Positions 6,800 to 57,006 of a DNA stretch of 64,000 nucleotides are shown piece by piece. The notes under the pieces were generated by a model. The model was not told the origin of the DNA, searched no databases, and worked only from the letters and a program-made list of their open reading frames with translations. The stretch spans positions 248,001 through 312,000 of IMG/VR virus record IMGVR_UViG_3300028394_002328. One strand, 5' to 3'. The position numbers and the translations under genes are program-made. Within the stretch, counting starts at the first letter, position 1. Each line of letters opens with the position of its first letter.

Positions 6800-6846
6800 A
6801 TAGCCTCCTTGTTGTATATTATTTATATTAATCAATAAATATATGT

Positions 6847-7125
6847 ATGCCCGATATCTTTCAACTTATTAGCGAATTAGGATTTCCTATTGCAGCTTCC
6901 TGCGCCTCGGGATATTTTGTTTTCCTCACTATTAAGTTTATTCTAGCAGGAGTTACTAGTAGTGTTAACAGTATGAATGCTATTGTTAAAGGATTGGACG
7001 ATAGAATTGATACTATGACTGACGAATTACAAAGACTAGATGTTAAGATTAGCCAATCACTGGGACTAGATCCTGATTACGAACGCATTGCTAGAGCAGA
7101 ACGAGTAGATCATAGGAGAGACTAA
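6847..7125 (+). CDS. small membrane protein (GFPI motif), paralog 1
   Basis: ELGFPIAA TM then coiled coil. Confidence 0.7.
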   Translation: MPDIFQLISELGFPIAASCASGYFVFLTIKFILAGVTSSVNSMNAIVKGLDDRIDTMTDELQRLDVKISQSLGLDPDYERIARAERVDHRRD

Positions 7126-7126
7126 T

Positions 7127-7480
7127 ATGGAAAATATTAGTGATTTGGTTAATAGATTTGGATTTCCTATTGTAGCAGCAGTAGGATTAGGTGGCATGAC
7201 TTACTATGTTTGGTCATGGGCGACTAAAGAAATTAAACCGGTTCTTAGTGAAGCAAGTGCTACACTAGTGGCTTTAATTGATAGAATTCGTGTATTAGAT
7301 AATGATTTAATCAGGTTAGATCAAAAAGTTCAAACAGTAACTCAACTACGAAAATCAGCATTGGATACTGAACATCATATTGCACATACACTAATTAATA
7401 AAAAACCAACAGAATTAATCTTAGGTAAACAGAAACTCAATAAACAAGATATAAATAATACATCTGAGACTGACCAATGA
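7127..7480 (+). CDS. small membrane protein (GFPI motif), paralog 2
   Basis: RFGFPIVAA TM; DRIRVLDNDLIRLD resembles DRIDTMTDELQRLD in paralog 1. Confidence 0.7.
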   Translation: MENISDLVNRFGFPIVAAVGLGGMTYYVWSWATKEIKPVLSEASATLVALIDRIRVLDNDLIRLDQKVQTVTQLRKSALDTEHHIAHTLINKKPTELILGKQKLNKQDINNTSETDQ

Positions 7481-8103
7481 AGATAATTGAAATATTAAAA
7501 GAATATGTAGATGATGTATCAAAATTAGTAATATTTGATATTGACGATACTCTTGTGCATACCCAAACTAAAGTCCATGTTATCAAAGATGGTAAAATAG
7601 TTCGTAGCCTAAACAGCCACGAGTTTACACATTATAAATTGAAACCCGGTGAAAAGTTTGATTTTGGAGATTTCACTGATGCTAAAGAATTCTTTGACAA
7701 TGCTAAGCCAATTATTCCTATGATGGATCAACTTAAACAAGATATTGCTACAGGTAATAAAGTTGTTATGGTAACTGCTAGGTCAGATTTTGATGATAAA
7801 GAATTGTTTTTAGATACATTTAGAAAATATGGGGTAGATATGAATAAAGTACATGTCTACCGTGCAGGAAATAATAAAGATAATATAAAGATTGACGAAA
7901 AGAAAAAGATTATTATTAGAAAGTTATTAGATAGCGGTAACTATAGCAAAGCGATTATGTATGATGATTCTATTCCAAATTTAGATAGTTTTGTCACACT
8001 TAAAAAAGAATACCCTGATACTAAGTTTTACGCTTGGAGTGTGAGTTTAGATGGTAAAGCAGGAGAGTATCAGAGAACCAACGAAAACATGCGGAGAATA
8101 TAA
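7477..8103 (+). CDS. HAD-superfamily phosphatase (PNKP 3'-phosphatase-like)
   Basis: FDIDDTL, VTAR, K, YDD motifs. Confidence 0.8.
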   Translation: MKIIEILKEYVDDVSKLVIFDIDDTLVHTQTKVHVIKDGKIVRSLNSHEFTHYKLKPGEKFDFGDFTDAKEFFDNAKPIIPMMDQLKQDIATGNKVVMVTARSDFDDKELFLDTFRKYGVDMNKVHVYRAGNNKDNIKIDEKKKIIIRKLLDSGNYSKAIMYDDSIPNLDSFVTLKKEYPDTKFYAWSVSLDGKAGEYQRTNENMRRI

Positions 8104-8795
8104 TGAGCGACTTTAGAAATTTATTAAACATTGTAGAAGAACTAAGTGAGCAGGACAATGTTGAGCTTCATGACAGTTTTGATATTGAATTATCCGAAGA
8201 CTTTGTAATAGAAACCGGAGTAATCGGATTTACAAAAGACGGGATAGTACTTGAAGCCGATGAAGAAACATTTAAATTACTTACTAGTAAAAAACTATTA
8301 AGTGAGGCTCCTAATCGTTTCAGACCATCTACAAATCCACATCGTTATGATAGTGATCAAGATTACTATGATGCAGTAGATGACGCAGAAGCATGGGACC
8401 GCGCACAAGACAGCGATGATGCAGAAGCATATTATGCGGATCAGGCAGATCAAAAAGCCTATGATGACGATATGTATCAAGAAGGTATGGTACTAGGTTC
8501 AGGGTCGGATGCTTCTAGTGCGGGATCATTTAAAATGGGTGAAGATGAAATGGATGAGGCCAAATATCAGGGCCGTGAAGTTCCATTAGGTAAACCAATG
8601 CAGGGTGATGTAGCCAAGTCTAAAGTCTATGTAAAGGGTCCAAAGGGTAATGTTGTCAAAGTTAACTTTGGTGACAAAAACATGCGTATTAAAAAGAATA
8701 TACCCGGACGCAGAAAATCATTTAGAGCCCGTCATCGTTGTGAAAACCCTGGACCACGTTGGAAAGCTAGATATTGGTCATGTAGAGCATGGTAA
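8103..8795 (+). CDS. probable virion-associated protein, acidic middle and basic C-terminal domain
   Basis: C-terminal KVNFGD...SFRARHRC...ARYWSCRAW domain seen in large phages. Confidence 0.65.
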   Translation: MSDFRNLLNIVEELSEQDNVELHDSFDIELSEDFVIETGVIGFTKDGIVLEADEETFKLLTSKKLLSEAPNRFRPSTNPHRYDSDQDYYDAVDDAEAWDRAQDSDDAEAYYADQADQKAYDDDMYQEGMVLGSGSDASSAGSFKMGEDEMDEAKYQGREVPLGKPMQGDVAKSKVYVKGPKGNVVKVNFGDKNMRIKKNIPGRRKSFRARHRCENPGPRWKARYWSCRAW

Positions 8796-9871: not shown

Positions 9872-10087
9872 ATGGCTAAAGAAGATACTATTAAAATGGA
9901 GGGCGAAATTACAGATGTTTTGCCCAATGCGACATTTAGAATATCATTAGGCACTGGTAATAAAATACTAGGTTATATTTCAGGAAGAATGCGTCAAAAC
10001 GAAATTAAAATTTTGTTAGGCGATACAGTTGAAGTAGAACTAAGCCCATATGATCTTACTAAAGGCAGAATAATCAGACGAAAATAA
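9872..10087 (+). CDS. infA: translation initiation factor IF-1
   Basis: [11 protein letters not shown]...LPNATFR...ISGRMR...[18 protein letters not shown]. Confidence 0.95.
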
Positions 10088-10122
10088 TGTAACAACTATC
10101 TTCTGTATTGTATAAATACAAC

Positions 10123-10677
10123 ATGCGAGATATTATTACATTACTTGAGGAAAAAACTAAACCTCAAGACATAGAAATTATTCCGTTGAATTTTACAGAC
10201 AGCGAGGTTAGTCCTGTGCTGTCTAAAGCCACTATAGACCTTCATTATGGTAAGTTAGCGCAAGGTTACGCTGAACGCTATAACAAAAAAGAAGGTGATA
10301 GAGATTTCAACTATGCAGGTGCTTTCCTGCATAATACATTGTTCCCACAATTCCGTGAAGTAAGAAACAATAACAACCCCAACGGCCCTATGCTAGGATT
10401 CGTCAATAAACATTTTGGCGACTATGATAATATGAAATCTGAGTTTGAAACTGAAGCCATGAAGATACAGGGTTCAGGTTGGATATATCTATCTACTGAT
10501 GGAAAGATTAAAACGATTGCGAATCATCAGGTACGCAACGATATATTATTGTTAATTGACTGGTGGGAACATGCTTGGATTTTAGATTACGGCAGTGATA
10601 AGAAAAAATACTTAAAAGAACAATGGAAGATTATCAACTGGAATGTGATTAACACAAGATGGGGGAAATCATTATGA
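10123..10677 (+). CDS. sod: Fe/Mn superoxide dismutase (divergent)
   Basis: [24 protein letters not shown]; metal ligands H, H, D, H appear retained. Confidence 0.85.
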
Positions 10678-10997: not shown

Positions 10998-11021
10998 TAA
11001 ATAGTACTATAAGGATTATAT

Positions 11022-12137
11022 ATGGCGATTTCGGGGATACAGGTAATCAATATTGGGCTACAAAACGAATCTGCAAATAGCGATTCGTTATATACCGCCT
11101 TTAATAAAACAAAAACTAACTTTGCTACATTATTTGGGAACGCTAGCCCATATAATACCTATACCGGCAATTTAGGAATTACCATAGATTCAAACTCTAC
11201 TACTGGTGTAGTAGATGTATTAAACACCGGCGTTCTGTCATTAACCGCAGGTAATGGAATAGTATTAAGTGGTAGTAATGGTAATGTCACTATAGAATCA
11301 ACTGGGGGAGGAAACGGTGGCGCAGGAACTGTTACTAGTGTTAGTGTAGTTGGTGCAGCATCTAATGCTAGAATTACTACTAGTGGTGGCCCTATTATTA
11401 GTAGTGGTACAATAACTCTAGACTTAGCAACCACCGGCGTAATTTCAGGTAGTTATACATATCCAACCGTAACAGTAGATACATACGGAAGAATAACAAG
11501 CATAGCCAATGCTTCATCAGTTGGCACAGTCACTAGTGTAGGACTTAGTCCAGGTTTTGGCATTCAAGTAACAGGAAGTCCTGTTACTACCAGTGGCACA
11601 ATGACTATTACTAATACTGGAGTTACTAGACTTAGCGCTGGTACAGGAATTAGTTTAAGTGGTAGCAATGGCAATGTAACAGTTTCTACTACAGTGGGCG
11701 CTGGCACAGTGACCAGTGTTGGAGTGTCCAGTTCTTCATTAACAGTATCAGGTAGTCCTGTTGTAGCCGCAGGTACAATTACAGTTGATTTACCATCTAC
11801 TGTTACAATGTCTAATGTAATTATAACAGGTCAATTCTTAGCAAATGGAAGTGAAGATTTAGCAAATGGCGCTGCTGCAAATCTATCCATAACCGCTAGT
11901 TATTTTAGTACCGCTGCTGCTGAAACAGCGACCGTAGCGGCCGGTACTGCAGGGCAAATAAAGACATTTATGATGGTTGCTGATACCGGCGACATGGTTA
12001 TCACTGTAACCAATGCAGGATGGAAATCTTCGGGTACAGGCACAATGACATTTGGAGATATAGGAGATGGGTGTACGCTACAATACATAAACAGTAAATG
12101 GTTCTGTATAGGTAACAACGGCGTAGTATTCGCATAA
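11022..12137 (+). CDS. tail-fibre-like virion protein with GTVTSV repeats
   Basis: Gly/Thr/Ser-rich repeats; TAAATA motif upstream near 10998. Confidence 0.75.
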   Translation: MAISGIQVINIGLQNESANSDSLYTAFNKTKTNFATLFGNASPYNTYTGNLGITIDSNSTTGVVDVLNTGVLSLTAGNGIVLSGSNGNVTIESTGGGNGGAGTVTSVSVVGAASNARITTSGGPIISSGTITLDLATTGVISGSYTYPTVTVDTYGRITSIANASSVGTVTSVGLSPGFGIQVTGSPVTTSGTMTITNTGVTRLSAGTGISLSGSNGNVTVSTTVGAGTVTSVGVSSSSLTVSGSPVVAAGTITVDLPSTVTMSNVIITGQFLANGSEDLANGAAANLSITASYFSTAAAETATVAAGTAGQIKTFMMVADTGDMVITVTNAGWKSSGTGTMTFGDIGDGCTLQYINSKWFCIGNNGVVFA

Positions 12138-22987: not shown

Positions 22988-23061
22988 TGGAGCGGGTAGC
23001 GAGAATCGAACTCGCAAATAATCCTTGGCAAGGATTCAGGTTACCTTTACATCATACCCGC
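22988..23061 (-). tRNA. tRNA-Gly (GCC)
   Basis: Cloverleaf, anticodon loop TTGCCAA, encoded CCA. Confidence 0.93.
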
Positions 23062-24089
23062 GCTTTCAATGTAGCATTTACTCTACGAACACTGTGACTA
23101 ATACCACAATACTGTGTACACTTTGACATGACATTCCTTAAGTTATCGGTGCCATACCAAAATCTTTTCAAGTCACCGTATCTCTTTATTTTAAACCCAG
23201 GGAACTTATGTGAGAAGCATAAACGGGCAATCCCGTCCATATCTACCATAATATTTCTGTCGAAGGAATTACAAATCAATTTTTCAGTACCTCGACCATT
23301 CCACCCAATAACCGCATCGTTGTTTTTGTGAACACTACGATGGTACATCTCAACTGTTTCAATCCATTCAGGATCTAAACTTAGATTATACTTTTCATTA
23401 CAAGCATTTAGTATTTTAAACAACCCTTCATGATCCCTAATGACATTGTTATCATAAAACTTGTCATCTCGCTGTTTGCCTTCTTTATCTAATAGTGTAC
23501 CAAACATTGGTTGAAGCCAATTTAATTTTAACTTATCTGCTTTAAGGTCATTCAATACAAAGTCATAAAACTTATCTAAATCTCTGTAATTTTGCTCGCA
23601 CATTATAGACATTGCGTATACAGGATTAGATTTGTTTAATTCTTTTCTCGCTTGAAGTAATAGACGAATAGCATTAACAGCCATGTCAAATGATCCTACC
23701 ATGCCTCTAGTTGAATCATGTACTTCAGGTATGTAACTGTTTAGTGATATAGTAATCTCAGTTGGACCTTCAACGATTAACTTTTTAGCCATTGACAAAT
23801 CAGTAACCATTGTACCGTTCATCACTGATAAACATCTTAGTCCTAATTGGCGACAATATCTAGTAATTGGCCAATATCTTTCAGGATTCATTAATGCTTC
23901 ACCGCCACATATTACTACTGCACCATGTGGATTTAATTCATGAAATTCCTGAATAATATTCCCGCGTTCTTCTATAGTGATATGAGTAGGTAATACAACT
24001 TCTTCCCTAGTCCAATACATGCAGGTTTTACATTTTAGATTACATTGTAAGTTAGTATCTAAGAATAGAAATTTTGGCGGGTGATTCAT
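23052..24089 (-). CDS. radical SAM enzyme with C-terminal Cys (twitch/SPASM-like) domain
   Basis: CNLKCKTC, CGGE. Confidence 0.88.
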   Translation of the reverse strand: MNHPPKFLFLDTNLQCNLKCKTCMYWTREEVVLPTHITIEERGNIIQEFHELNPHGAVVICGGEALMNPERYWPITRYCRQLGLRCLSVMNGTMVTDLSMAKKLIVEGPTEITISLNSYIPEVHDSTRGMVGSFDMAVNAIRLLLQARKELNKSNPVYAMSIMCEQNYRDLDKFYDFVLNDLKADKLKLNWLQPMFGTLLDKEGKQRDDKFYDNNVIRDHEGLFKILNACNEKYNLSLDPEWIETVEMYHRSVHKNNDAVIGWNGRGTEKLICNSFDRNIMVDMDGIARLCFSHKFPGFKIKRYGDLKRFWYGTDNLRNVMSKCTQYCGISHSVRRVNATLKARV

Positions 24090-24097
24090 TAGTCTAT

Positions 24098-24766
24098 TTA
24101 TGCAGGTTTATGCCCACTACTGTCAGCACCTGTTAATATCCAAGATTTTTCATGTCCTATTTGTATTGTAGGATCTCCCCATATAGTATAACCTAATTTT
24201 TTTACCCTATGACAAAATCCTGTATCTTCTGATAAAAAGGTTTCTCTTTCACTATCAGAAAATACTAGAGGTTTGAACCACGGGAATGTCAATGATTCAA
24301 ATACACCCTTTTGAACACCCATGAATCCCATGCCAGTTGCTAATAATTCAATTCGCTCGCCATTAACATCGACCTCATTCCTAGGCATCCAATTCATTGT
24401 GTTTTTTTCTTTACCTTCAACTGCCTGTGCGTATATTTTATTATTATATTGAATATAAAATCCAGTTACAATTTTATGTTCGGGGTTACTAATTAATTTT
24501 TCTAAATCTTTAGGTGTCCAAACGCTATCACTATCAATCCAAACAATCCAATCGTATTTTACTTTTCCATTAAATGGCTTGAAATCTTTAGGAGGATATC
24601 CTGTTCCACCTAATAACCAATTACGGCAATTATAAATTACAGGTGTATAAGTAGTGCTAACATTAAATGCTATACCTTCTTTGTTTAACCAAGTAACGGT
24701 ATTAGTCCAACATGTCACCCACGTTCTACTAAATGACATTCCAGGAAAACAAAATACTATATTCAT
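24098..24766 (-). CDS. GT-A fold glycosyltransferase
   Basis: WIDSD, GMGFM, SEDTGFC, GHEK. Confidence 0.75.
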   Translation of the reverse strand: MNIVFCFPGMSFSRTWVTCWTNTVTWLNKEGIAFNVSTTYTPVIYNCRNWLLGGTGYPPKDFKPFNGKVKYDWIVWIDSDSVWTPKDLEKLISNPEHKIVTGFYIQYNNKIYAQAVEGKEKNTMNWMPRNEVDVNGERIELLATGMGFMGVQKGVFESLTFPWFKPLVFSDSERETFLSEDTGFCHRVKKLGYTIWGDPTIQIGHEKSWILTGADSSGHKPA

Positions 24767-24780
24767 AATTATTATTAATT

Positions 24781-24855
24781 TGGTGCCTCGTGACAGGGTC
24801 GAACTGCCGACATTCGCCGTGTAAAGGCGCTACTCTACCACTGAGTTAACGAGGC
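24781..24855 (-). tRNA. tRNA-Val (TAC)
   Basis: Cloverleaf, CCA. Confidence 0.93.
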
Positions 24856-24865
24856 TTTTTTACTT

Positions 24866-24994
24866 TTAACCTTGACCTCTATATTTTTTAAAACTTCTTT
24901 TTTCTGTTTTATTTAGAGTGCTAGTCTTAACCTTTCCACCTTGACTAGTTCGTTTAACAACCGATTTTGTAGTACCCTCAGATGCCTTAGCCAT
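24866..24994 (-). CDS. small basic peptide ending KKYRGQG (not in ORF track)
   Basis: MAKASEGTTKSVVKRTSQGGKVKTSTLNKTEKRSFKKYRGQG; AAGGA SD. Confidence 0.75.
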   Translation of the reverse strand: MAKASEGTTKSVVKRTSQGGKVKTSTLNKTEKRSFKKYRGQG

Positions 24995-25053
24995 ATAATA
25001 TCCTTTTTAAAAATGTACAGTATTTACTTAGAATACAGATACAGAAAAAAATA

Positions 25054-25491
25054 TTAAGCTAGGTATTCGTAATTGACAGTTTCAGTGTTATTTCTGAAAA
25101 CACTAGCTCCATTTTTTAAATGAAATCTGCGAGCCATTTCAGTTGGTGGACTTAGTGTTACAAAACGACTAATATGAGGTTTATTGGATTTAATATAACT
25201 AACAGCATTTAAAATTAAATCTCTACCAGCACCTGGCTTATAACTCCATATAGTATAGAATATAGCCATGTTAGGATTGCTATCATGATTGAACAATTCG
25301 CTTTCTGTTGTAGGTATTTGGTCTTGATAACTAACACAAGTAATTGCTTTTACTATGTTATTTTCATCTTTCAATACAAAGATATCTCTATTGTTACCTA
25401 TTCTTATAGAATGAGGTATATTGGGGCGAACAGGGTCCTCAGCCAATTTAGTAAACAATTCGTCTTGGTCTGATTTAATCAAGTATAACAT
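25054..25491 (-). CDS. hypothetical protein, possibly GNAT-like
   Basis: Start moved to 25491 because the track start lies inside tRNA-Leu; FYTIWSYKPGAG, TLSP, FHLKNGA. Confidence 0.65.
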   Translation of the reverse strand: MLYLIKSDQDELFTKLAEDPVRPNIPHSIRIGNNRDIFVLKDENNIVKAITCVSYQDQIPTTESELFNHDSNPNMAIFYTIWSYKPGAGRDLILNAVSYIKSNKPHISRFVTLSPPTEMARRFHLKNGASVFRNNTETVNYEYLA

Positions 25492-25529
25492 ATTGCTATT
25501 TATTATATGTAGATATAAAAGATATATTT

Positions 25530-25613
25530 TGGTGCCCCAGGTCGGACTCGAACCGACACGCATTTCTGCACTGGCTTCTAAGACCAGCATGGCTACCGTT
25601 ACATCACCGGGGC
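25530..25613 (-). tRNA. tRNA-Leu (TAG)
   Basis: Long variable arm, CCA. Confidence 0.92.
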
Positions 25614-25622
25614 TAATATAAT

Positions 25623-25696
25623 TGGAGCGGGTAGAGGGAATCGAACCCTCGTATGCAGCTTGGAAGGCTGCCGTTCTACCATTGAACTACACCCGC
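25623..25696 (-). tRNA. tRNA-Gly (TCC)
   Basis: Cloverleaf, CCA. Confidence 0.95.
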
Positions 25697-25701
25697 ACTG
25701 T

Positions 25702-25791: not shown

Positions 25792-25798
25792 CTAATAA

Positions 25799-27022: not shown

Positions 27023-27648
27023 ATTTTGGATACGATATTGTCAGGAAGATGCTTTAAATCAAAGCCTAAATTAGATAATTTTTCTTTACCATTTGGACTT
27101 AATTTGACAAATCCAACTATTATCTTTTCATGCGGTTCGCCCTGAATTAATCTAGTATAATGATATCCATCAGGATTTAAATCTAATATCTTTTTACCAG
27201 TTAAAAACTCAGCATATTTATTGTCAATTGGTTTTGCGCCTGCTTTAAGCATTAATTTTTCAGCAGGTCCGCTTACTTCTGCCCATGCTCTTTTTGTTTT
27301 AATGTCATCTTTTTTGAGCATGTTATAATCTTTTAATCCTTGTGCAGTGGCTTTATATTCACCTTCAGGATTAAGTTCTGTTTCAGTAGCACTAGCAATC
27401 ATTTTAAAATTATCCGTATTAGATACTTGTTTATAAACACCTAATGCAGTTATATGATCACCACGGCGAACTACTTTCCAATAACCTAAATCATTTGCTA
27501 ATTCTTCAGCACTATTAGCGCTTTTAAAGCCGCCAATCTTTTTATAACTACGCTGAAGCATATCCCATATCTTATCCGCATACTTCATTTTTTGTTCAGG
27601 AGTATGTAGATTAAGAACCTTTTCAACTAATAATTGATGATAACGCAT
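27019..27648 (-). CDS. hypothetical protein, possible virion-internal protein
   Basis: TAAATA 4 nt upstream; N-terminus MRYHQLLVE. Confidence 0.7.
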   Translation of the reverse strand: MRYHQLLVEKVLNLHTPEQKMKYADKIWDMLQRSYKKIGGFKSANSAEELANDLGYWKVVRRGDHITALGVYKQVSNTDNFKMIASATETELNPEGEYKATAQGLKDYNMLKKDDIKTKRAWAEVSGPAEKLMLKAGAKPIDNKYAEFLTGKKILDLNPDGYHYTRLIQGEPHEKIIVGFVKLSPNGKEKLSNLGFDLKHLPDNIVSKI

Positions 27649-27708
27649 CTAGTATTTATGCAATGCGGCAATATCATATCTACAATGGCGTTGTATAAAT
27701 AACAATAT

Positions 27709-28590
27709 ATGAACAATATTTATTTAGTTACGTTTCCAGGTGGCGGTGGTGGTGATTTTTTATGCTCTCAAATTTCTAAAGACATTAATTTTTATCCATT
27801 AGAATCAAGCATGAATACTGCGACTAATACATGTGAGTTAGAGAATCCATTTTTAAAATGGAATATTGACCTAAAATCTCATCATAAATTTAAGGTTTTA
27901 GAAATTTCTGATGTTATGTTAAAAGAAATAGAATTATATTATAATGAAAAAGATTTAGTAGCACCTACTCATTTTTTCGGTAATCTTAGTGAAATTAAAT
28001 TGCCTAGGCTTAAAGGAGTTCACCTATACACTAAACAATTTTTTCCCCTTTTCTATTTGTTATATTGGATAAAAAGATTGTCTGGCCCGAAGCACTTTAT
28101 AGATAAAGAGACTTTTTTAAGAAAGGTAACAGGTGCTAGTAGCTTACCCAATGATGCATATGCTAAATTCTTTAGAGATAAAATAGCAGATAATATATTG
28201 GCAAATAGAAATTTTGTATATGATTTTGAACTAATAGCCGCAACTAGATTACTTGGTAATGCCATAGATTGCATTGAAAGGTTTTATAGATATTATTGTT
28301 TTATTTTTTCCTTTCCTAATCCTCACACCGTATCTAAAGATTGGATTCCATATAATATAGATAATCTCTATCTAGACCCAGTTAATAACTCAAAAGAATT
28401 TTGTCAACTGTTCAACATGGAAAAACCAATTAATCCCGAAATTATTGCATCATATTATTCCAAAAATTTACAGGTAATCGAAGAAACATTTGGCGAACCA
28501 TATGAAGTTTTTATTCTCGGTGATTGGTTATCAAAATTAAAAAAATGGATTGAACTTAAATGTCCAAATTCATATTCAATTAATTTTTAA
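27709..28590 (+). CDS. P-loop/sulfotransferase-like protein, paralog 1
   Basis: N-terminal FPGGGGGDFL; strong similarity to next gene. Confidence 0.55.
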   Translation: MNNIYLVTFPGGGGGDFLCSQISKDINFYPLESSMNTATNTCELENPFLKWNIDLKSHHKFKVLEISDVMLKEIELYYNEKDLVAPTHFFGNLSEIKLPRLKGVHLYTKQFFPLFYLLYWIKRLSGPKHFIDKETFLRKVTGASSLPNDAYAKFFRDKIADNILANRNFVYDFELIAATRLLGNAIDCIERFYRYYCFIFSFPNPHTVSKDWIPYNIDNLYLDPVNNSKEFCQLFNMEKPINPEIIASYYSKNLQVIEETFGEPYEVFILGDWLSKLKKWIELKCPNSYSINF

Positions 28591-35741: not shown

Positions 35742-35837
35742 TTATCCAAACCTCGGAGTAGCCCTTCTATCAGATGTGGGATAGGCTGTCTCCAATGACC
35801 ATGATTTAATATAGGTTGATAAGAAACAAGTTTTCAT
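35742..35837 (-). CDS. putative leader peptide, 31 aa (not in ORF track)
   Basis: MKTCFLSTYIKSWSLETAYPTSDRRATPRFG*; TAAATA 5 nt upstream; 3' end overlaps the antiterminator arm. Confidence 0.7.
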   Translation of the reverse strand: MKTCFLSTYIKSWSLETAYPTSDRRATPRFG

Positions 35838-35871
35838 AAAGCTATTTATCCCTAATTATTATTTTAAATAA

Positions 35872-36474
35872 TTACCAACTAGCTAATACACAATATCTAG
35901 TATATACTTCTAATGGTAATGTCCAATCATCTTCTATTTTAAATCCACGAGATACTAATTCTTTTATCAAAGGCTCGGTACTAGTAACAGTATTAATATG
36001 AGTATCTATTTGAAAATCTGTACTTTGTAAATAAACATATCCTGATTCATACTTTTTAAAGTTTAACCAATCATAATTCATATGCTCACATGAGGTATTA
36101 ACTATCAAGGTATTGTTCTTAATATTATCTTCCCAAGTATTACATTGCGTTGCATCGGCAATTATTGATTTAAAATCCCAATCATAGTTTAATTTTCTAC
36201 TGAAATTAGCCCAAAAATGATCTAGTTCAATTCCTATAGCACTTTTGATAATATCATGTTCATGTAACATATGGGGCAGCATACCATGCCACTGCCCCAT
36301 AAAGATACAATAATAATCAGTTAAATTAGATAGGTGTTTAACCGCGCCAATCTTACTATGCAATTGTGAGTAAGTTAACCCATGTCTTAGATGCCTATGT
36401 GTGGCTTCATCAACATTTAAACCCCATTCACTAACTTGCATGAGTCTCCCAATTGAATTGGCTAGTTTTTCCAT
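35872..36474 (-). CDS. methyltransferase-like protein
   Basis: IFMGQWHG, GIELD, NTSCEHM, LQS. Confidence 0.6.
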   Translation of the reverse strand: MEKLANSIGRLMQVSEWGLNVDEATHRHLRHGLTYSQLHSKIGAVKHLSNLTDYYCIFMGQWHGMLPHMLHEHDIIKSAIGIELDHFWANFSRKLNYDWDFKSIIADATQCNTWEDNIKNNTLIVNTSCEHMNYDWLNFKKYESGYVYLQSTDFQIDTHINTVTSTEPLIKELVSRGFKIEDDWTLPLEVYTRYCVLASW

Positions 36475-36520
36475 ATACTATATTTAATATATGAGCTAGG
36501 TTTAATAATATAAATATTGT

Positions 36521-37192
36521 ATGCCAAAAATAAATTATTTTTTAGATTCATACAAATATTTTTGCCAATTAAACCAAGATCCAATCACAGGTTCCGTATT
36601 AGACTATGGCTGTAACTATGGAATGTTTTTAGAAAGTAGCAGAAGTTTATTCTCTGAAAACATGTATACTGGTATAGATGTAGACTTAGAGGCATTGCAA
36701 GCTGGTAAGAAAATGTTTCCAAATGCAAAATTTATTCATTATGACAAACATAATTTTATGTACAACCCAACCGGGTCTAGAAGCCTTTGGCCTGACATTA
36801 ATGAACAATTTGATTGTATTATAAGTTATAGTGTCATAACACATACCACAAAAGAAGACATGTTAGATGCTATTGCCTGGCTCTATACTAAGTTGAAATC
36901 AGATAAAAAAATGTTTATTACTTGGTTAGATCAAGAAAATAAAATAGCATTAGCTTACTTTTATCAAAAACGTATGAAAGATTTTGGTAGTTGTGATAGG
37001 ATTCAAACAGAAGATTACGTTTATCTCATTGACAATAAAACATCCAAAGTACCCAATGATGGGATGTTTTTAGCTTTTTACAAAAAAGAATATTTGGCTA
37101 GCTTGTTGTCCGATTATGATTTTTCTTTAGAGCAATCACCTGATTTTACTAATAGATGTTTTCAAGACTGTATAATTATAAAGAAAATATAA
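36521..37192 (+). CDS. class I SAM-dependent methyltransferase
   Basis: VLDYGCNYG, GIDVD, YSVITH. Confidence 0.85.
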   Translation: MPKINYFLDSYKYFCQLNQDPITGSVLDYGCNYGMFLESSRSLFSENMYTGIDVDLEALQAGKKMFPNAKFIHYDKHNFMYNPTGSRSLWPDINEQFDCIISYSVITHTTKEDMLDAIAWLYTKLKSDKKMFITWLDQENKIALAYFYQKRMKDFGSCDRIQTEDYVYLIDNKTSKVPNDGMFLAFYKKEYLASLLSDYDFSLEQSPDFTNRCFQDCIIIKKI

Positions 37193-43314: not shown

Positions 43315-44452
43315 TTTTCATTTTTCCTACTCTGTAAATTTTTTTAAATGATACGAGGCCCTCAGGACCGTTGTCATTTGTATACACATATTTACTAGCC
43401 ATTTTAACCATAGAGTTTATTCCCTCTTTCCAAATTTGGTAGGCTCTAGATTCTGTATGGTTGATTAAAAACCAATGGTCATACTCTCTATTCCAATCTA
43501 AGATTGGCTTATCAGCTTGAAACCAATTATTATTCCAAGTTGAATAAATTATATTTCTCAGCATTTTCTCATGAATAAGATTATAAACTTTAGTACCAAT
43601 TGGTACAGTCCAAATTTTTTGATGTACAGGATTTAACTCTAAGTATTTTTTAATAACATGTGCTTGTTTACATATTATTTCAAATGCATTTGGGTTCCAG
43701 TAAAAATACTCTACTGTTGCATTATCATATCCTTGAAGGTAATTTTCTACCCCCGAATTAGTAGCTCTATCGGTAAAACCAACAACAAAATCATTAAATT
43801 TATTAATAGCAGATCTAGGTTTACATACACCTAATATTACACCAATTTTTTGATTTTTATCTAAAACTTTTCTTACATCATCAATAGCAGCAATATCCCA
43901 CCTGACCCCACTGACCGGGCTTAGTAATTCTCTCCGATTTTCAATCCATCCATCGTCATTGCTTTTTAAATAAGAATCAAAGACATGGTCAGTTAAATCC
44001 GATACCGTAATTTTTATATCAGGATATAAATTGTGAATATCTTTCAGCCTCGGTATTGTTTGTAAAACATGCTCAGAATATAATGAATTGGATGAAGATT
44101 GATCGTTTTTATCTAAGTTTTTTACTGAAACTGTTCCTTTTTCAAAATGAATAACTAGCAGTTCATCAACCTTTAAATTTTGACGAAGGAAGCTAGTTAA
44201 CAAATTATGTGAGTCTGCTCCACCACTATATAGAATTATAATATAATCATATTTTTCCCGCAATTCCTTGGCTCTTTTGTCATATAACTCATCAAGAGTT
44301 TGGTTAGGTTCTACTGTCCAATCAAATTTATCAAAAGCATTGTCATAAAACGCCCATTCTACTTCTTGATTAGTTTCGGTAGCATGAATGCAAGCTAAAA
44401 TTTTATTAGTAAATGTTTTAGATCCTACACGGTAGTAGCTGTTATTTTTCAT
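43298..44452 (-). CDS. PP-loop adenine nucleotide alpha-hydrolase-like enzyme
   Basis: LYSGGADS. Confidence 0.7.
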   Translation of the reverse strand: MKNNSYYRVGSKTFTNKILACIHATETNQEVEWAFYDNAFDKFDWTVEPNQTLDELYDKRAKELREKYDYIIILYSGGADSHNLLTSFLRQNLKVDELLVIHFEKGTVSVKNLDKNDQSSSNSLYSEHVLQTIPRLKDIHNLYPDIKITVSDLTDHVFDSYLKSNDDGWIENRRELLSPVSGVRWDIAAIDDVRKVLDKNQKIGVILGVCKPRSAINKFNDFVVGFTDRATNSGVENYLQGYDNATVEYFYWNPNAFEIICKQAHVIKKYLELNPVHQKIWTVPIGTKVYNLIHEKMLRNIIYSTWNNNWFQADKPILDWNREYDHWFLINHTESRAYQIWKEGINSMVKMASKYVYTNDNGPEGLVSFKKIYRVGKMKNESSN

Positions 44453-44497
44453 ATTATGTATTTATTGAGTAAATAATAGTAGTTTATATTTCATCGA

Positions 44498-45679
44498 ATG
44501 AATCCAAAAACCTGTATGTTTCCTTTCACTTCATTGAGTGTGTCGCCCCGAGGCGCAATCAGACCATGCTGCATGTATAATAGTCCTGATATGCCCACTT
44601 GGGAAAATATCAAAGACTTAACATCGGAAGTACCATGGCCTAGCAAATCTATTAAGATACTTCAAGAAAAAATGTTGAGTGATCGCATAGAAGAATTAAC
44701 TCCATTGTGCAACTCTTGTTGGGAACCTGAAAATGCAGGACTTGATAGTCATAGATTAAGATACCAAAGATTATTAGCACTTCCAAATGAAGAGTTAATT
44801 AAAACCCCTAAACTAACATTTTTAGATTTACAGTTTGGATACTTATGTAATTTAAGTTGTATTATGTGCCATCCCGAAGAAAGTTCACAGGTTCAAAAAA
44901 CAATTTTCAAATTAATAGACAATACTTCAAATACTAAACAAAAAAAAATTTACCAATCTAAGGTAAATTTATATGACAACCATGATTGGACTGTAGATGA
45001 AAATTCGTATCAAAAAGTTTTGGAATTATGCCAGCCTGTCAAGAATATTAAAATATCAGGGGGAGAGCCATTTTTTAATCCAAAATTTAAACCTTTCTTA
45101 GAATTTTTATTATCAAAAAAAGTTCCAATTGAATACTTGCATGTGACCACAAATTTAACTATATACGATAAAGACATTGTTGAACTGTTAAATAGATTTA
45201 CTAATGTTAGATTTAGATTCAGTTTAGAATCAATAGGTAAAGAAGATGACTTTATAAGATGGCCTAGCAGATGGGAGGAAAAACAAGAAAATTTACATGC
45301 ATATTTAAGTCAGTTACACACAAAAAACATTGTTTCTAGTACATGCATCCAAAGTTTAAATCTATTTTCTTTTTCAAATACTATTAAATTCTTGAAAAAT
45401 TTACGTTATAATATCAATATTCAACAACAAATTGCTGAAAATTCATTAGCTGGGATTTATTACTCCGACAAACAATATATTGAACACTACTTAAAAAATA
45501 ATGAAGCTAATTTTATATCTAAGTATTTAGAAAATATTATAACCCATATCAATGATCCTTCATTTCAAGTTAATTATTTTCTAGATATGGCCAAACTACA
45601 AAATAAAAATATACAAAACGAATTTCCAATTTGGTATGAGTTTCATACCAAATATATTAGAGATTCAAATTCAACGTAA
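44498..45679 (+). CDS. radical SAM enzyme with N-terminal twitch/SPASM-like domain
   Basis: CMFP..RPCC..CNSCW; CNLSCIMC; SGGEP. Confidence 0.88.
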   Translation: MNPKTCMFPFTSLSVSPRGAIRPCCMYNSPDMPTWENIKDLTSEVPWPSKSIKILQEKMLSDRIEELTPLCNSCWEPENAGLDSHRLRYQRLLALPNEELIKTPKLTFLDLQFGYLCNLSCIMCHPEESSQVQKTIFKLIDNTSNTKQKKIYQSKVNLYDNHDWTVDENSYQKVLELCQPVKNIKISGGEPFFNPKFKPFLEFLLSKKVPIEYLHVTTNLTIYDKDIVELLNRFTNVRFRFSLESIGKEDDFIRWPSRWEEKQENLHAYLSQLHTKNIVSSTCIQSLNLFSFSNTIKFLKNLRYNINIQQQIAENSLAGIYYSDKQYIEHYLKNNEANFISKYLENIITHINDPSFQVNYFLDMAKLQNKNIQNEFPIWYEFHTKYIRDSNST

Positions 45680-48952: not shown

Positions 48953-48981
48953 ATAGATATCTCCTTTAAAAAGTTTCATAC

Positions 48982-49010
48982 AGTATATATTTATTCTAAA
49001 GTGGTGTCAA
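48982..49010 (-). promoter_or_regulatory. sigma70 promoter with embedded TAAATA
   Basis: TTGACA-17-TATACT; spacer ends in TAAATA. Confidence 0.75.
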
Positions 49011-49686: not shown

Positions 49687-50321
49687 TTTTCAAGACTTAG
49701 ATATTAAATAACTGATGTACTATTTAGAATTGCCTAATTTTCCAACAGATGTGTTGACCGAGCAGTATCAACGTCCAGGCTCGTATGATATTAAAGTTAA
49801 TTATTGGAATGTTAAAATAGAATTTTTTAAAAAACAGATAATTGATTTTTTTGTAAGTCATAATCTAGAATTAAAAGATGGAGAAATATTTAAGAAAAGT
49901 CCCGGAATAATAGGTATTGTTCATACTGATGTTGTTTGGGATAGTTTTCAATCTGCATGGACCCGTTGGCATTGTGCTGTTAATATTAACCTTGACAACA
50001 CTAATTCATTGATGTATTGGTTTTCAACTACCGATACTGAAGTGTATCCCATGCCAGGAGCAACTGGATTAAGAGGAATTCATTATGGCACTAAAAATAA
50101 TAACAACTTTCATGACCGTGATGAATATACAGTCCTCGATAGTTTTTGCATTAATGGTCCAACGCTAGTAAGAACCAGTGTTCCTCACTTGGTTAAGAAT
50201 TTAGATAATAAAGATCGGTGGTGCCTTAGTCTAAGATTTAAGGGAAACCCAACTTTTGAAGAATGTGCTAAGAAATTGCTCCTTTAAAGTGATCTACGCC
50301 AAGACTACGAAGATTAATTTT
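49669..50321. repeat. 22-bp direct repeat flanking a single-gene cassette
   Basis: CAAGACTACGAAGATTAATTTT at 49669-49690 and 50300-50321. Confidence 0.9.
49715..50287 (+). CDS. cupin/2OG-Fe(II) oxygenase-like protein
   Basis: VHTD...AVNIN...VPHLVKN...RWCLSLRF. Confidence 0.6.
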   Translation: MYYLELPNFPTDVLTEQYQRPGSYDIKVNYWNVKIEFFKKQIIDFFVSHNLELKDGEIFKKSPGIIGIVHTDVVWDSFQSAWTRWHCAVNINLDNTNSLMYWFSTTDTEVYPMPGATGLRGIHYGTKNNNNFHDRDEYTVLDSFCINGPTLVRTSVPHLVKNLDNKDRWCLSLRFKGNPTFEECAKKLLL

Positions 50322-55159: not shown

Positions 55160-55210
55160 AAACTTTTCCCCTATTGTTAGAGAAGTTACTTAATATTTAC
55201 TCGGTTACCA

Positions 55211-56212
55211 TTAACATTTATCTACTAAGTTATCTCTAAATATACGCCAACACTCTTCCCAACTCCAACGTAGACTAGCTTCTTCTACACGAACACGATC
55301 TAATCGCAAACATTGGTCAATAGCAGTCTTTAAATCCTCATCCATATAACCTGTTAGTCCCTGATCTATAACATCTTTAGGTCCAGTTACTGGATATGCT
55401 GCTACTGGTGTGCCACAAGCCATAGCTTCAATCATTACTATACCAAACGTATCCCAATAACTAGGGAATACGAATACATCAGCATCGGCGTAATACTTAG
55501 CTAGTTCTGCCCCACGTTTTACTCCTACGAATTCAACATCAGGATATTCACGCTCCATACGACGGCGGCATGGACCATCACCTACGACTATTTTGGTAGC
55601 ACTTGGATAGTATAATCTACAAAAATCATCTAAGTTTTTTTCTTTGCTGACACGCCCTACATTTAACAATATGGGCTGTGATAGTTCTGTAGCAGTTCTA
55701 GTGCTGCTGCTAAATATGGTACGATCAACCCCGCGAGTCCAAGGCTTGATGTCGGTTCTAAATCCACGACTAGCCAAATCATCAACCATGCTTTGTGTAG
55801 TGGTCAGTACACGACCACTATGTTTATGAAACCAACGCAAGTAACGATAACTCCAGTCAGTGGGTATGCCTGCAATTTTGTTTATGGCTTCGGGGAAACG
55901 AGTATGGTAGCTAGTATTATAACGCCATCCCCAATAGTCCATCCAGCAACGGGCAGCAAAGCCCACTGGACCTTCTGTAGCAATGTGTATGTAGTCGGGA
56001 TTTACTTTTTCAATAATCCTGCCAATGCCCCAGGTCCAACTAAGTTTGATTTCACCATAGCCAGGACAGGGAATATTAACAAACTGCCGGGGATCAAGAT
56101 AAACAAAATCATAGCCATCCCGCTCAGCCAAAACTTCCAGGTTATGAAAGGTAGTAACAACACCATTAACCTGCGTTGGTTCATTGTCGGTTATGATTAA
56201 TACTGTCTTCAT
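55211..56212 (-). CDS. GT4 glycosyltransferase, Agt-like diacylglycerol glycosyltransferase
   Basis: TD...QVNGVV, HIATEGPVG, SYHTRFPE, VGRVSKEKN, DTFGIVMIEAMACGTPV. Confidence 0.85.
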   Translation of the reverse strand: MKTVLIITDNEPTQVNGVVTTFHNLEVLAERDGYDFVYLDPRQFVNIPCPGYGEIKLSWTWGIGRIIEKVNPDYIHIATEGPVGFAARCWMDYWGWRYNTSYHTRFPEAINKIAGIPTDWSYRYLRWFHKHSGRVLTTTQSMVDDLASRGFRTDIKPWTRGVDRTIFSSSTRTATELSQPILLNVGRVSKEKNLDDFCRLYYPSATKIVVGDGPCRRRMEREYPDVEFVGVKRGAELAKYYADADVFVFPSYWDTFGIVMIEAMACGTPVAAYPVTGPKDVIDQGLTGYMDEDLKTAIDQCLRLDRVRVEEASLRWSWEECWRIFRDNLVDKC

Positions 56213-56966
56213 TTTCACGCACCTCTGCCCATGTTACGATTTCCCAGCGACCATCCCAATGTTCAACTAGTGCTGTACAACTTTCACACCAGTCACCATC
56301 GTTCATGTAGATTACGCCGTTGATTTCTTTGATTTCAGCCTTATGTATATGCCCACAGATCACACCATCGTAGCCCTTCTTTTTGCAATAACCGGCTAGA
56401 TTTTGTTCAAATTGAAACATAAAGTCTACCGCTTTTTTGACCCGGTGCTTAAGGTACAAGCTAAGGCTCCAGTAGCCAAAACCCAAACGATGACGAATCC
56501 AATTGAATTTAGTATTGATATTGAGTACGCAGTCATATGCTTTGTCTCCTAATATGCTGAGCCAAGGGGCCAGCCTAGTAATACCATCAAATAAATCACC
56601 ATGAACTACAAGATACCTTTTTCCATCTATACCGGTGTGAATAGCCTGATTACAGATTTTAATACGACCAAAACTAACACCATATGGTATAAGTGGGCGT
56701 AAAAATTCATCATGATTGCCTGCCACATAAACTACTTGTGTTCCGCGTTTGGCATGACCTAATACACGGCGAATTACATTGGTATGACTTTGATGCCACT
56801 TTAGAGTGTTCTGTTTCATTTTCCACGCATCTATAATATCGCCTACTAGATACAACGTTTCGCAACTATTATGTTTTAAAAAGTTGTTTAGATAGTCTGC
56901 TTTACAGGCTTTAGTACCGAGGTGTACATCACTAATAGAGATTGTACGGTAAGTTGTTTGCGGCAT
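56181..56966 (-). CDS. PlcP-like Mn-dependent phospholipase C (LpxH/YbbF metallophosphoesterase family)
   Basis: SDVHLG, LVGDIID, GNHDEFLR, HGDLFD, GYWSLS, CGHIH, NDGDWCESCTAL. Confidence 0.85.
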   Translation of the reverse strand: MPQTTYRTISISDVHLGTKACKADYLNNFLKHNSCETLYLVGDIIDAWKMKQNTLKWHQSHTNVIRRVLGHAKRGTQVVYVAGNHDEFLRPLIPYGVSFGRIKICNQAIHTGIDGKRYLVVHGDLFDGITRLAPWLSILGDKAYDCVLNINTKFNWIRHRLGFGYWSLSLYLKHRVKKAVDFMFQFEQNLAGYCKKKGYDGVICGHIHKAEIKEINGVIYMNDGDWCESCTALVEHWDGRWEIVTWAEVRENEDSINHNRQ

Positions 56967-56971
56967 AATAC

Positions 56972-57006
56972 TATTTAATGTTTAATATATTACAAAGCTG
57001 TTACAA
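56972..57006 (-). promoter_or_regulatory. Pho-box-like repeat plus TAAATA promoter (plcP-agt)
   Basis: TGTAAC-N5-TGTAAT-N11-TAAATA. Confidence 0.75.

What the first reader, a model, noticed from the sequence alone, without database searches (positions are those of the whole stretch)
6836..56977. Many late-type genes appear leaderless: TAAATA-N4-7-ATG
Seen: TAAATA lies 4-7 nt before the start codon at 6847(+), 10123(+), 24089(-), 25491(-), 27648(-), 27709(+), 35837(-), 36474(-), 36521(+), 44452(-), 49715(+) and 56966(-), with no SD in the gap. Established: T4-type late promoters (TATAAATA) start transcription a few nt downstream. Inference: these mRNAs begin at or next to the AUG. Leaderless translation could give late genes an initiation route independent of SD recognition, possibly linked to the phage IF-1.
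Basis: partly seen in the sequence, partly recalled or inferred. Interest (0 to 1): 0.65.

Follow-up and report, generated by a model that had tools for sequence, protein, structure and literature searches.

The report
Late promoter boxes abutting start codons
In this 335-kb freshwater jumbo phage about one gene in ten (portal, terminase, tail fibres and many accessory genes) has a T4-style late-promoter box only 4-7 bases before its ATG, so the mRNA most likely starts at the start codon and is translated without a ribosome-binding site; the RNA 5' ends have not been mapped.

Summary
All 12 cited TAAATA-N4-7-ATG sites exist. Eleven open long ORFs; 35837(-) opens only a 31-aa ORF. Genome-wide, 35 genes carry the box 4-7 nt before the ATG, against 2.6 +/- 1.6 in dinucleotide shuffles. 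A second class of 41 genes has the box 16-24 nt upstream, usually with a Shine-Dalgarno (SD) sequence in the gap. Gaps of 8-15 nt are at chance level.

The phage is a distant relative of RaK2, CBB and GAP32, where ATAAATA is already a predicted late promoter. Six related environmental records encode a gp55-type late sigma; this record's contig breaks off just before that locus.

Orthologues switch between the two forms. For one small gene, 40 distinct upstream regions have gap 2-8, no SD and always ATG. Nine have gap 17-21, always an SD, and GTG twice. None lies between.

T4 geometry puts +1 on the sixth base after the box, which is the A of the ATG at gap 5. The arrangement is shared by the environmental relatives but absent from RaK2, CBB, Phosso and a Vibrio phage.

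Leaderless late mRNAs are the best reading (about 0.7), but no transcription start was mapped. The proposed IF-1 link remains speculative. I rate it a new variant of a known kind.

The parts
4382..4395 (+). Box TAAATA (4382-4387), 5-nt gap, ATG 4393 of a 111-aa gene (4393-4728).
6836..6849 (+). Box 6836-6841, gap 5, ATG 6847 of a 92-aa holin-like gene (6847-7125). Back-to-back with 6799(-), which has a box at 6820-6825, gap 20 and the SD AAGGAGG.
   Evidence: (phrog_18771 aligned over residues 2-92 of 93)
9873..10088 (+). Phage-encoded translation initiation factor IF-1 (71 aa). Its ATG lies 2 nt after the upstream stop; it has no box and no SD.
   Evidence: (PF01176, E=3e-22)
10113..10125 (+). 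Box 10113-10118, gap 4, ATG 10123 of a 184-aa gene (10123-10677), directly downstream of IF-1.
24087..24100 (-). Box 24095-24100, gap 5, ATG 24089 of a 345-aa radical-SAM protein (23052-24089).
25489..25502 (-). Box 25497-25502, gap 5, ATG 25491 of a 145-aa gene (25054-25491). It lies just downstream of tRNA-Leu (25530-25613), which rules out the longer ORF.
27646..27711 (.). Back-to-back pair in a 60-bp spacer. Box 27653-27658 (-), gap 4, ATG 27648 (209 aa). Box 27696-27701 (+), gap 7, ATG 27709 (293 aa). A near relative has a 6-nt deletion in the spacer but keeps both boxes and both gaps.
35742..35848 (-). Box 35843-35848, gap 5, ATG 35837, but the ORF is only 31 aa and is followed by a terminator-like hairpin. 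Doubtful as a protein gene; it may be a short late transcript.
36472..36523 (.). Back-to-back pair in a 46-bp spacer. Box 36481-36486 (-), gap 6, ATG 36474 (200 aa). Box 36511-36516 (+), gap 4, ATG 36521 (223 aa).
44450..44500 (.). Back-to-back pair. Box 44459-44464 (-), gap 6, ATG 44452 (384 aa). Box 44470-44475 (+), gap 22, ATG 44498 (393-aa radical-SAM protein).
48977..48993 (-). Box 48988-48993, gap 8, ATG 48979 (193 aa). Borderline member of the close class.
49705..49717 (+). Box 49705-49710, gap 4, ATG 49715 (190 aa).
56964..56977 (-). Box 56972-56977, gap 5, ATG 56966 of a 261-aa metallophosphoesterase (SbcD/gp47-like exonuclease; 56181-56966).
10998..11024 (+). Example of the second class: box 10998-11003, gap 18 containing the SD AAGGA, ATG 11022 (371 aa). 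Other examples in the window: 13546+, 32187-, 35158-, 47664-, 48325-, 49060+, 50667-, 60913-.

Best explanation
TAAATA, in the extended form (g/a)A-TAAATA-(c/a)(t/a), is the -10-like box of a T4-type late promoter. It is read by host RNA polymerase carrying a phage gp55-family sigma and needs no -35 element.

This lineage uses the box in two architectures.
(1) Close class: about 35 genes genome-wide, 12-13 of them in the window. The box ends 4-7 nt (mostly 4-5) before the ATG. Transcription should then start at the A of the ATG or 1-2 nt before it. The mRNA has no room for an SD and must be translated as a leaderless mRNA, by direct recognition of a 5'-terminal AUG.
(2) Short-leader class: about 40 genes. 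The box ends 16-24 nt before the start, giving a leader of 10-19 nt that begins almost directly with an SD.
Intermediate spacings are not used above chance. They would be too long for leaderless initiation and too short to hold an SD.

Inferred consequence: a close-class cistron is translatable only from its own late-promoter transcript, because on read-through RNA its AUG is internal and has no SD. Translation would therefore be gated by late-promoter use.

Shown here: the spacing statistics, the shared motif, the presence of the sigma in relatives, and the toggling among orthologues.
Inferred: the position of +1, leaderless translation, and the gating.
For: - Spacing: 35 genes at gap 4-7 against 2.6 +/- 1.6 in shuffles; 41 at gap 16-24 against 6.0; 4 at gap 8-15 against 5.2.
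- The flanking consensus is the same in both classes.
- Relatives: ATAAATA is already the predicted late promoter before structural genes in CBB and GAP32, and CBB and RaK2 carry an annotated gp55-like sigma.
- A gp55-like sigma (phrog_12791, E 1e-62 to 1e-74; phrog_234, E 4e-21) is present in L037 and in all five environmental relatives tested. In L037 it sits in the same synteny as in CBB and RaK2.
- Close-class genes include classic late genes: portal, a terminase large-subunit piece, a virion structural protein, tail-fibre proteins and a gp25-like baseplate protein.
- Geometry: in T4 promoter P23 the flipped adenines are at -12, -9 and -8, so the box spans -13 to -6 and +1 is the sixth base after it, which is the A of the ATG at gap 5 (PMC7892883).
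- In 32 of the 33 short-leader genes with a recognisable SD, the SD core starts at least 5 nt after the box, which bounds +1 from the other side.
- The base before the ATG is a pyrimidine in 28 of 35 close genes against 148 of 341 others (p=5e-5). This fits the pyrimidine(-1)/purine(+1) start-site preference of RNA polymerase (the rule is from my own knowledge).
- Orthologue toggling, small gene after portal: 40 distinct upstream regions have gap 2-8, no SD and always ATG; 9 have gap 17-21, always an SD, with GTG twice; one has no box but an SD; none falls in 9-16 (Fisher p=5e-10).
- Orthologue toggling, 149-aa baseplate gene: the gap is either 4-5 without an SD or 15-17 with AGGA. The flanks are otherwise unconserved, and the N-terminus and length are conserved.
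- 16 of 35 close genes head divergent units, including several back-to-back spacers of 44-60 bp with a box on each strand (three of them close-class on both strands), so ribosomes cannot arrive from an upstream cistron.
- All 35 close starts are ATG; TAAATA-N4-7-GTG and -TTG occur only 3 and 2 times. This matches the AUG dependence of leaderless initiation (PMC9031893).
Against: - No 5' end was mapped. The single RNA run found, a lake-water metatranscriptome, gives only 151-262-nt contigs at depth 2-5 with no end information.
- The sigma gene is not in this record. The contig starts inside a baseplate-module gene about 3.5 kb short of where relatives carry it.
- No gp45-type clamp N-terminal domain was detected, and gp33 was not tested, so the T4 geometry is borrowed from a distant system.
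- At gap 4 (13 genes) strict T4 spacing would put +1 on the U of the AUG, so some flexibility in start-site choice has to be assumed.
- Portal orthologues also show gaps of 8-14 nt and longer leaders without an SD. This lineage therefore tolerates non-SD short leaders, and the two-state picture is not absolute.
- The host is unknown. PstS points weakly to Burkholderiales. Leaderless translation is inefficient in E. coli, the one proteobacterium for which I have a source (PMC9031893).
Confidence: 0.7

Rival explanations
1. The box is a late promoter, but close-class proteins are made mainly from read-through polycistronic RNA by translational coupling or 70S scanning from the upstream cistron. 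The tight box-ATG spacing would then be a by-product of genome compaction, with the box sometimes doubling as the upstream stop codon.
For: 16 of 35 close genes lie no more than 30 nt downstream of a same-strand gene. In a few cases the TAA of the box is the upstream stop, for example the 149-aa baseplate gene and several portal-downstream orthologues. IF-1, which is reported to stimulate 70S scanning strongly (PMC9031893), is encoded by the phage.
Against: 16 of 35 close genes head divergent units or follow a tRNA, with no upstream cistron. Compaction does not explain a fixed 4-5-nt gap, the empty 8-15 range, or the perfect association between spacing class and presence or absence of an SD across orthologues.
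Confidence: 0.13
2. TAAATA is not a promoter here but an RNA-level signal. It could be an A/U-rich ribosome (S1) loading element that replaces the SD, or a processing site whose cleavage creates a 5'-proximal AUG.
For: The motif is A/U-rich and sits where an SD would sit. About half of the genes lack a simple SD match, and portal orthologues have SD-less short leaders, so non-SD initiation clearly exists in this lineage.
Against: The same motif at 16-24 nt is followed by a normal SD at normal SD-ATG spacing, so it is not a substitute for an SD there. It matches the T4, CBB and GAP32 late-promoter box, and a gp55-type sigma is conserved in the clade. It occurs on each strand of 44-60-bp divergent spacers, where promoters must lie.
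Confidence: 0.07
3. The pattern is a chance or compositional artefact of an AT-rich genome, or an artefact of start-codon calling.
For: The genome is 36-37% G+C, and TAAATA occurs 428 times on the two strands.
Against: The enrichment is 13-fold over dinucleotide shuffles, with a maximum of 9 in 1000 shuffles against 35 observed. No permuted hexamer shows the peak apart from ATAAAT, which is the same box shifted by one base. The analysis that starts from the motif does not depend on gene calls. The ATGs are the first possible starts, and N-termini are conserved from Met1.
Confidence: 0.01

Closest known systems
Bacteriophage T4 late promoters (TATAAATA) read by gp55, gp33 and gp45
   Same: An 8-bp A/T box at the -10 position with no -35 element. 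The sigma is gp55-family (found in relatives). The box precedes structural genes. T4 also couples late-promoter use to translatability for genes such as e (lysozyme), where only the late transcript exposes the ribosome-binding site (from my own knowledge, not checked here).
   Different: The first T is not conserved: the consensus is (g/a)ATAAATA rather than TATAAATA. No gp45-type clamp domain was detected. To my knowledge T4 late mRNAs have SD-bearing leaders, whereas here the box abuts the ATG in about 10% of genes.
Predicted ATAAATA late promoters of RaK2-like jumbo phages (CBB, GAP32; PMC5259590)
   Same: The same motif and the same phage supergroup (31-33% amino-acid identity in the baseplate wedge protein). 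A gp55-like sigma sits next to gp47/gp46 homologues and is divergent from the baseplate module.
   Different: In CBB, RaK2, Phosso and Vibrio phage 2.275.O the pattern TAAATA-N4-5-ATG is not enriched: 7, 5, 4 and 6 matches against controls of 22, 37, 2 and 5. In a 45-kb structural region of CBB the boxes lie at least 26 nt from the starts. The close spacing is specific to the freshwater lineage.
-10 element adjacent to ORFs giving leaderless mRNAs in Deinococcus-Thermus (PMC12340547), and Thermus phage phiYS40 (Sevostyanova et al. 2007; seen here only as an entry in that paper's reference list, and that its middle and late transcripts are leaderless is my recollection, not read here)
   Same: A -10 box 6-7 bp before the ORF, no SD, and two upstream motif classes (a -10-like box or GGAG) in one genome. 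In D. radiodurans the box was shown experimentally to act as a promoter for leaderless genes.
   Different: There the box is the host sigma-A -10 element (TANNNT) in a phylum where leaderless genes are about a third of all genes. Here it is a phage-sigma late box, in a phage whose cultured relatives all infect Proteobacteria.
Lambda cI mRNA from PRM and other single leaderless phage genes
   Same: A 5'-terminal AUG, no SD, and AUG dependence (PMC9031893).
   Different: Those are isolated regulatory genes, not a whole temporal class that includes portal, terminase and tail-fibre genes.

Membership tests
T4-type late promoter system | A/T-rich -10-like box of the TATAAATA type with no conserved -35 region | tested here: met
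   Consensus (g/a)A-TAAATA-(c/a)(t/a). Positions further upstream are unconserved in both classes and across orthologues. The first T of the T4 octamer is not conserved.
T4-type late promoter system | Phage-encoded gp55-family sigma (tested in the clade) | tested here: met
   L037:1360-2391(-) matches phrog_12791 (E=1.6e-71) and phrog_234 (E=4e-21). All five environmental relatives match with E from 1e-62 to 1e-74.
T4-type late promoter system | gp55-family sigma in this very record | tested here: inconclusive
   No match to phrog_234, phrog_12791 or PF04542 in G000. However, the contig starts inside the baseplate-module gene that lies about 3.5 kb from the sigma gene in relatives, and the record is rated 95% complete.
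T4-type late promoter system | Sliding-clamp activator gp45 and co-activator gp33 | tested here: not met
   PF02916 (gp45 N-terminal domain) was not found in G000 or in the two complete relatives. The CBB authors also found neither gp33 nor gp45. gp33 was not tested here.
T4-type late promoter system | Transcription starts about 6 nt downstream of the box | not testable with these tools
   The only RNA run is held as short contigs without end information.
T4-type late promoter system | The box precedes late (virion and lysis) genes | tested here: met
   Portal, a terminase large-subunit piece, baseplate wedge, sheath-region genes, tail-fibre proteins, a virion structural protein and a holin-like protein.
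Leaderless mRNA | mRNA 5' end at the start codon or within a few nucleotides of it | not testable with these tools
   Inferred only from the box-ATG gap of 4-7 nt and from T4 geometry.
Leaderless mRNA | No SD or other leader signal between the promoter and the start | tested here: met
   34 of 36 close-class genes (gap 3-8) have no SD match in the usual window; in the other two the match lies upstream of the box. None of 40 close-class orthologue contexts has an SD, against 9 of 9 in the long-gap class.
Leaderless mRNA | AUG strongly preferred over GUG or UUG | tested here: met
   35 of 35 close-class starts are ATG. The box followed at gap 4-7 by GTG or TTG opens a long ORF only 3 and 2 times. 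In orthologues GTG appears only in SD-led variants, 2 of 9 against 0 of 40.
Leaderless mRNA | Actual SD-independent translation from a 5'-terminal AUG | not testable with these tools
   Needs toeprinting, reporter assays or ribosome profiling.

The most novel reading that the evidence does not exclude
A widespread freshwater clade of RaK2-related jumbo phages has moved its gp55-type late promoter box right up to the start codon of about 10% of its genes, including portal, terminase and tail fibres. These proteins would then be made only from 5'-AUG mRNAs. That would make translation strictly dependent on late-promoter initiation, a promoter-gated translational switch. Single genes flip in evolution between this state and a minimal SD leader. 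The phage-encoded IF-1, conserved in the clade, would tune host ribosomes toward 70S or leaderless initiation late in infection.
Probability: 0.25. Interest if true: 0.75.

Novelty: new variant of a known kind. Interest (0 to 1): 0.6.

Why it matters
If the 5' ends are confirmed, this would be a whole temporal class of leaderless genes driven by a phage-specific sigma, in a phage group whose cultured members all infect Proteobacteria. I found no report of leaderless late genes for T4-like or RaK2-like phages in the paper searches.

It would also offer a natural experiment. Hundreds of environmental orthologues toggle between a 5'-terminal AUG and a minimal SD leader, which bears on what spacing leaderless initiation tolerates and how promoter choice can gate translation.

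There is a practical point too. Gene callers and start-site models tuned to SD motifs will mis-score these starts in jumbo-phage metagenomes, whereas the box plus its spacing is a usable start-site signal.

Tried and rejected
- RNA evidence. One lake-water metatranscriptome (X1) holds 15% of the sampled words of window 23000-29000. When laid on that stretch it gave only short low-depth contigs plus cross-matching tRNA signal, with no start or end information.
- Sigma in this record. The PHROG gp55 profiles and Pfam Sigma70_r2 found nothing in G000. phmmer and tblastn with CBB_244 found nothing.
- The 224-aa gene upstream of the window's SbcD-like gene (57118-57792-) was considered as a syntenic sigma candidate. 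I rejected it: it has no sigma match and only 3 relatives, so it is not a core gene.
- A nucleotide megablast of the 1286-aa gene against the phage collection gave no match.
- Orthologues of window genes 36521(+) and 27709(+) exist only in one or two near-identical contigs, so they say little beyond conservation.
- The IF-1 link was tested by co-occurrence only and does not discriminate.
- Host: a PstS search gave Burkholderiales at 55-58% identity, a weak hint only.
- Not used: another genetic code, the large protein searches, structure prediction and complex prediction. The question did not rest on them.

Full report
**What the window is.**
The window is bases 248001-312000 of a 335,035-bp IMG/VR virus record, rated 95% complete and linear, with 36-37% G+C. 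It is a contractile-tailed jumbo phage. I found a gp6-like baseplate wedge protein, tail sheath, portal, prohead protease, a terminase large-subunit piece, tail-fibre proteins, a ClpA-like protease and a 6344-aa virion-type ORF. By tblastn its wedge protein is 31-33% identical to those of RaK2, K64-1, CBB-like, 121Q-like, Atu_ph07, Phosso and XbC2. It is therefore a distant member of the RaK2-like supergroup. More than 590 IMG/VR contigs encode wedge or portal proteins related to it; the 80 best of each are 75-100% and 64-91% identical. One lake-water metatranscriptome holds pieces of it. This is a widespread clade known only from environmental sequence; the one run that names a habitat is lake water.

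**The observation.**
Eleven ATGs open ORFs of 92-384 aa and are the first possible start after the upstream stop. At 25491(-) the longer in-frame ORF overlaps a tRNA-Leu gene, so 25491 is the true start. The site at 35837(-) opens only a 31-aa ORF followed by a terminator-like hairpin. Two further sites were missed: 4393(+) at gap 5 and 48979(-) at gap 8.

**Statistics.**
- I started from the motif and made no gene calls. TAAATA followed by an ATG that opens an ORF of at least 60 aa occurs 13, 17, 4 and 4 times at gaps 4-7. It occurs about once per gap at 8-15, and 6-9 times per gap at most of 16-20.
- Thirteen of the 14 permuted hexamers of the same composition give a few counts per gap, 8 at most. 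The exception, ATAAAT, peaks at gaps 5-6 (12 and 14) because it is the same box shifted by one base.
- With a simple greedy gene call (377 genes, 95% coding), 35 genes have the box at gap 4-7. Dinucleotide-preserving shuffles give 2.64 +/- 1.62, with a maximum of 9 in 1000.
- At gap 16-24 there are 41 genes against 6.0 +/- 2.4. At gap 8-15 there are 4 against 5.15.
- The distribution is therefore two enriched peaks separated by a range at chance level.

**What the box is.**
- Both classes share the same extended consensus, (g/a)A-TAAATA-(c/a)(t/a), with nothing conserved further upstream.
- In the long-gap class the gap usually holds a normal SD (GGAG, AGGA or AAGGA) 4-11 nt before the ATG. 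In 32 of the 33 long-gap genes of G000 that have one, its core starts at least 5 nt after the box.
- ATAAATA has already been proposed as the late promoter before structural genes in the relatives CBB and GAP32. It resembles T4's TATAAATA, and CBB and RaK2 carry an annotated gp55-like late sigma next to gp47/gp46 homologues.
- I could not find that sigma in this record. However, the contig begins inside a baseplate-module gene. In the close relative L037 (84% wedge identity) a gene matching the gp55-like profiles lies about 3.5 kb further on. It is divergent from the baseplate module and next to an SbcD-like gene (phrog_12791 E=1.6e-71; phrog_234 E=4e-21).
- All five larger environmental relatives tested, two of them complete, have this sigma.
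- A gp45-type clamp N-terminal domain was not detected.
- Genes behind the box include portal, the terminase piece, a virion structural protein, a gp25-like baseplate protein, tail-fibre proteins and a holin-like protein. They also include accessory genes: two radical-SAM proteins, an SbcD-like phosphoesterase, an epimerase and a homing endonuclease.

**Why close spacing implies leaderless mRNA.**
- In the cryo-EM structure of the T4 P23 open complex, gp55 flips the adenines at -12, -9 and -8. TATAAATA therefore spans -13 to -6, and +1 is the sixth base after the box (PMC7892883). The box lies about one helical turn upstream of the start (PMC2988020).
- With a 5-nt gap the A of the ATG is +1. 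With 4, 6 or 7 nt the start falls within a base or two of it.
- The SD-led class bounds +1 from the other side, because SD cores begin as early as 5-6 nt after the box.
- The base before the ATG is a pyrimidine in 28 of 35 close-class genes against 148 of 341 others (p=5e-5). This fits the usual pyrimidine(-1)/purine(+1) preference of start-site choice (my own knowledge).
- All close-class starts are ATG. This is as expected for leaderless initiation, which depends on a 5'-terminal AUG and falls off with distance from the 5' end (PMC9031893).
- The same layout, a -10 box 6-7 bp before the ORF, has been shown experimentally to drive leaderless genes in Deinococcus radiodurans (PMC12340547).

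**Comparative evidence.**
- The 149-aa gp25-like gene upstream of the wedge gene keeps its length and its N-terminus across about 50 distinct relatives. Its upstream flank is otherwise unconserved. The box is nearly always there, either 4-5 nt from the ATG with no SD or 15-17 nt away with AGGA in between.
- For the 75-aa gene after portal I found 50 distinct upstream contexts. Forty have gap 2-8 (mostly 5), never an SD and always ATG. Nine have gap 17-21, always an SD, twice with GTG. One has no box but has an SD. None falls in 9-16 (Fisher p=5e-10).
- So evolution flips single genes between two working states and avoids the middle.
- Portal itself is less tidy. The box is always present. Besides gaps 4-7 (21 contexts) there are gaps 8-14 (11 contexts) and longer leaders, often without a clear SD. 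This lineage therefore also tolerates short non-SD leaders, which I leave unexplained.

**Against translational coupling.**
Sixteen of the 35 close-class genes head divergent units. They include back-to-back pairs in spacers of 44-60 bp with a box on each strand, such as window 27648(-)/27709(+) and 36474(-)/36521(+). No upstream cistron can deliver ribosomes there. A near relative with a 6-nt deletion in one of these spacers keeps both boxes and both gaps.

**Where the trait occurs.**
- The pattern TAAATA-N4-5-ATG, counted against its reversed control, gives 45 against 18 in this genome.
- In the environmental relatives the counts are 45/18, 35/9 (a complete genome with terminal repeats), 28/18, 25/18 and 10/0.
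- In the cultured relatives they are 7/22 in CBB, 5/37 in RaK2, 4/2 in Phosso and 6/5 in Vibrio phage 2.275.O.
- In 45 kb of CBB structural genes the boxes lie at least 26 nt from the starts.
- The promoter is therefore old in the supergroup, while the close spacing is a feature of the environmental lineage.

**IF-1.**
- The phage really encodes IF-1 at window 9873-10088 (PF01176, E=3e-22). It is translationally adjacent to the upstream gene and lies just before the close-class gene at 10123.
- It is kept in the two complete relatives and in a third that is 86% complete.
- Phosso also has it without the close spacing, and CBB, RaK2 and the Vibrio phage have neither.
- IF-1 is reported to stimulate leaderless translation in vitro and 70S scanning. 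A link is therefore plausible but unsupported here.

**Limits.**
- No transcript 5' end was seen. The one RNA run gives short contigs only.
- The T4 geometry is borrowed from a distant system that also has gp33 and gp45, which I did not find here.
- The host is unknown. PstS is closest to Burkholderiales at 55-58% identity.
- My gene calls are crude, although the analysis that starts from the motif does not depend on them.

**Verdict.**
The promoter-abuts-ATG architecture is real, selected, and specific to this lineage. Leaderless or near-leaderless late mRNAs are the best explanation (about 0.7). The main rivals are coupling from read-through RNA (about 0.13) and an RNA-level signal (about 0.07). 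It is a new variant of known things: T4-type late promoters, and leaderless genes next to a -10 box. It is not a new kind of system.

Noticed in passing
window 22988-34573 (- strand): A cluster of 18 tRNA genes (Gly x2, Val, Leu x2, Ser x2, Met, Asp, Gln, Lys, Asn x2, Ile, Pro, Trp, Arg, Thr) interleaved with small ORFs. The high RNA depth at 25600-25799 is cross-matching tRNA from other organisms.
   Followed up: partly
window 9873-10088 (+): A phage-encoded translation initiation factor IF-1 (71 aa; PF01176, E=3e-22). It is conserved in the two complete relatives and in a third that is 86% complete, and is also present in Sinorhizobium phage Phosso.
   Followed up: partly
window 35742-35848 (- strand): A late-type box followed at 5 nt by an ATG that opens only 31 codons, then a G+C-rich hairpin and a T run. 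It could be a short late transcript or a micro-protein rather than a normal gene.
   Followed up: partly
G000:75760-78697 (L012:15760-18697): The terminase large-subunit ORF (515 aa) matches only roughly the second half of its best profile (positions 435-883 of 890). A homing-endonuclease gene lies just upstream. The terminase gene may be split or interrupted by a mobile element. Both ORFs have close-class boxes.
   Followed up: no
G000:8717-27751 (L009/L010): A single 6344-aa ORF directly after the baseplate wedge gene, in the same position as the roughly 10-kb structural genes of RaK2 and CBB but almost twice as long.
   Followed up: no
G000:1-1082 and 330522-335035: Both contig ends fall inside genes: a truncated 753-aa-type baseplate-module gene at the start, and an ORF of more than 1500 aa running off the end. 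The missing ~5% probably holds the gp55-like sigma and its SbcD-like neighbour seen in relatives.
   Followed up: yes
window 55211-60913 (- strand) and 23052-24089, 44498-45679: Auxiliary-type genes: PstS phosphate-binding protein (closest bacterial hits Burkholderiales, 55-58%), a NifU-like Fe-S assembly protein, a glycosyltransferase and two radical-SAM proteins.
   Followed up: partly
L143, L147, L148, L155, L156 and other portal loci (about 50 nt upstream of the portal ATG): Some portal orthologues have the box 12-14 nt from the ATG, or 17-27 nt away, with no recognisable SD. These would be short A/U-rich non-SD leaders and do not fit the clean two-state picture.
   Followed up: no
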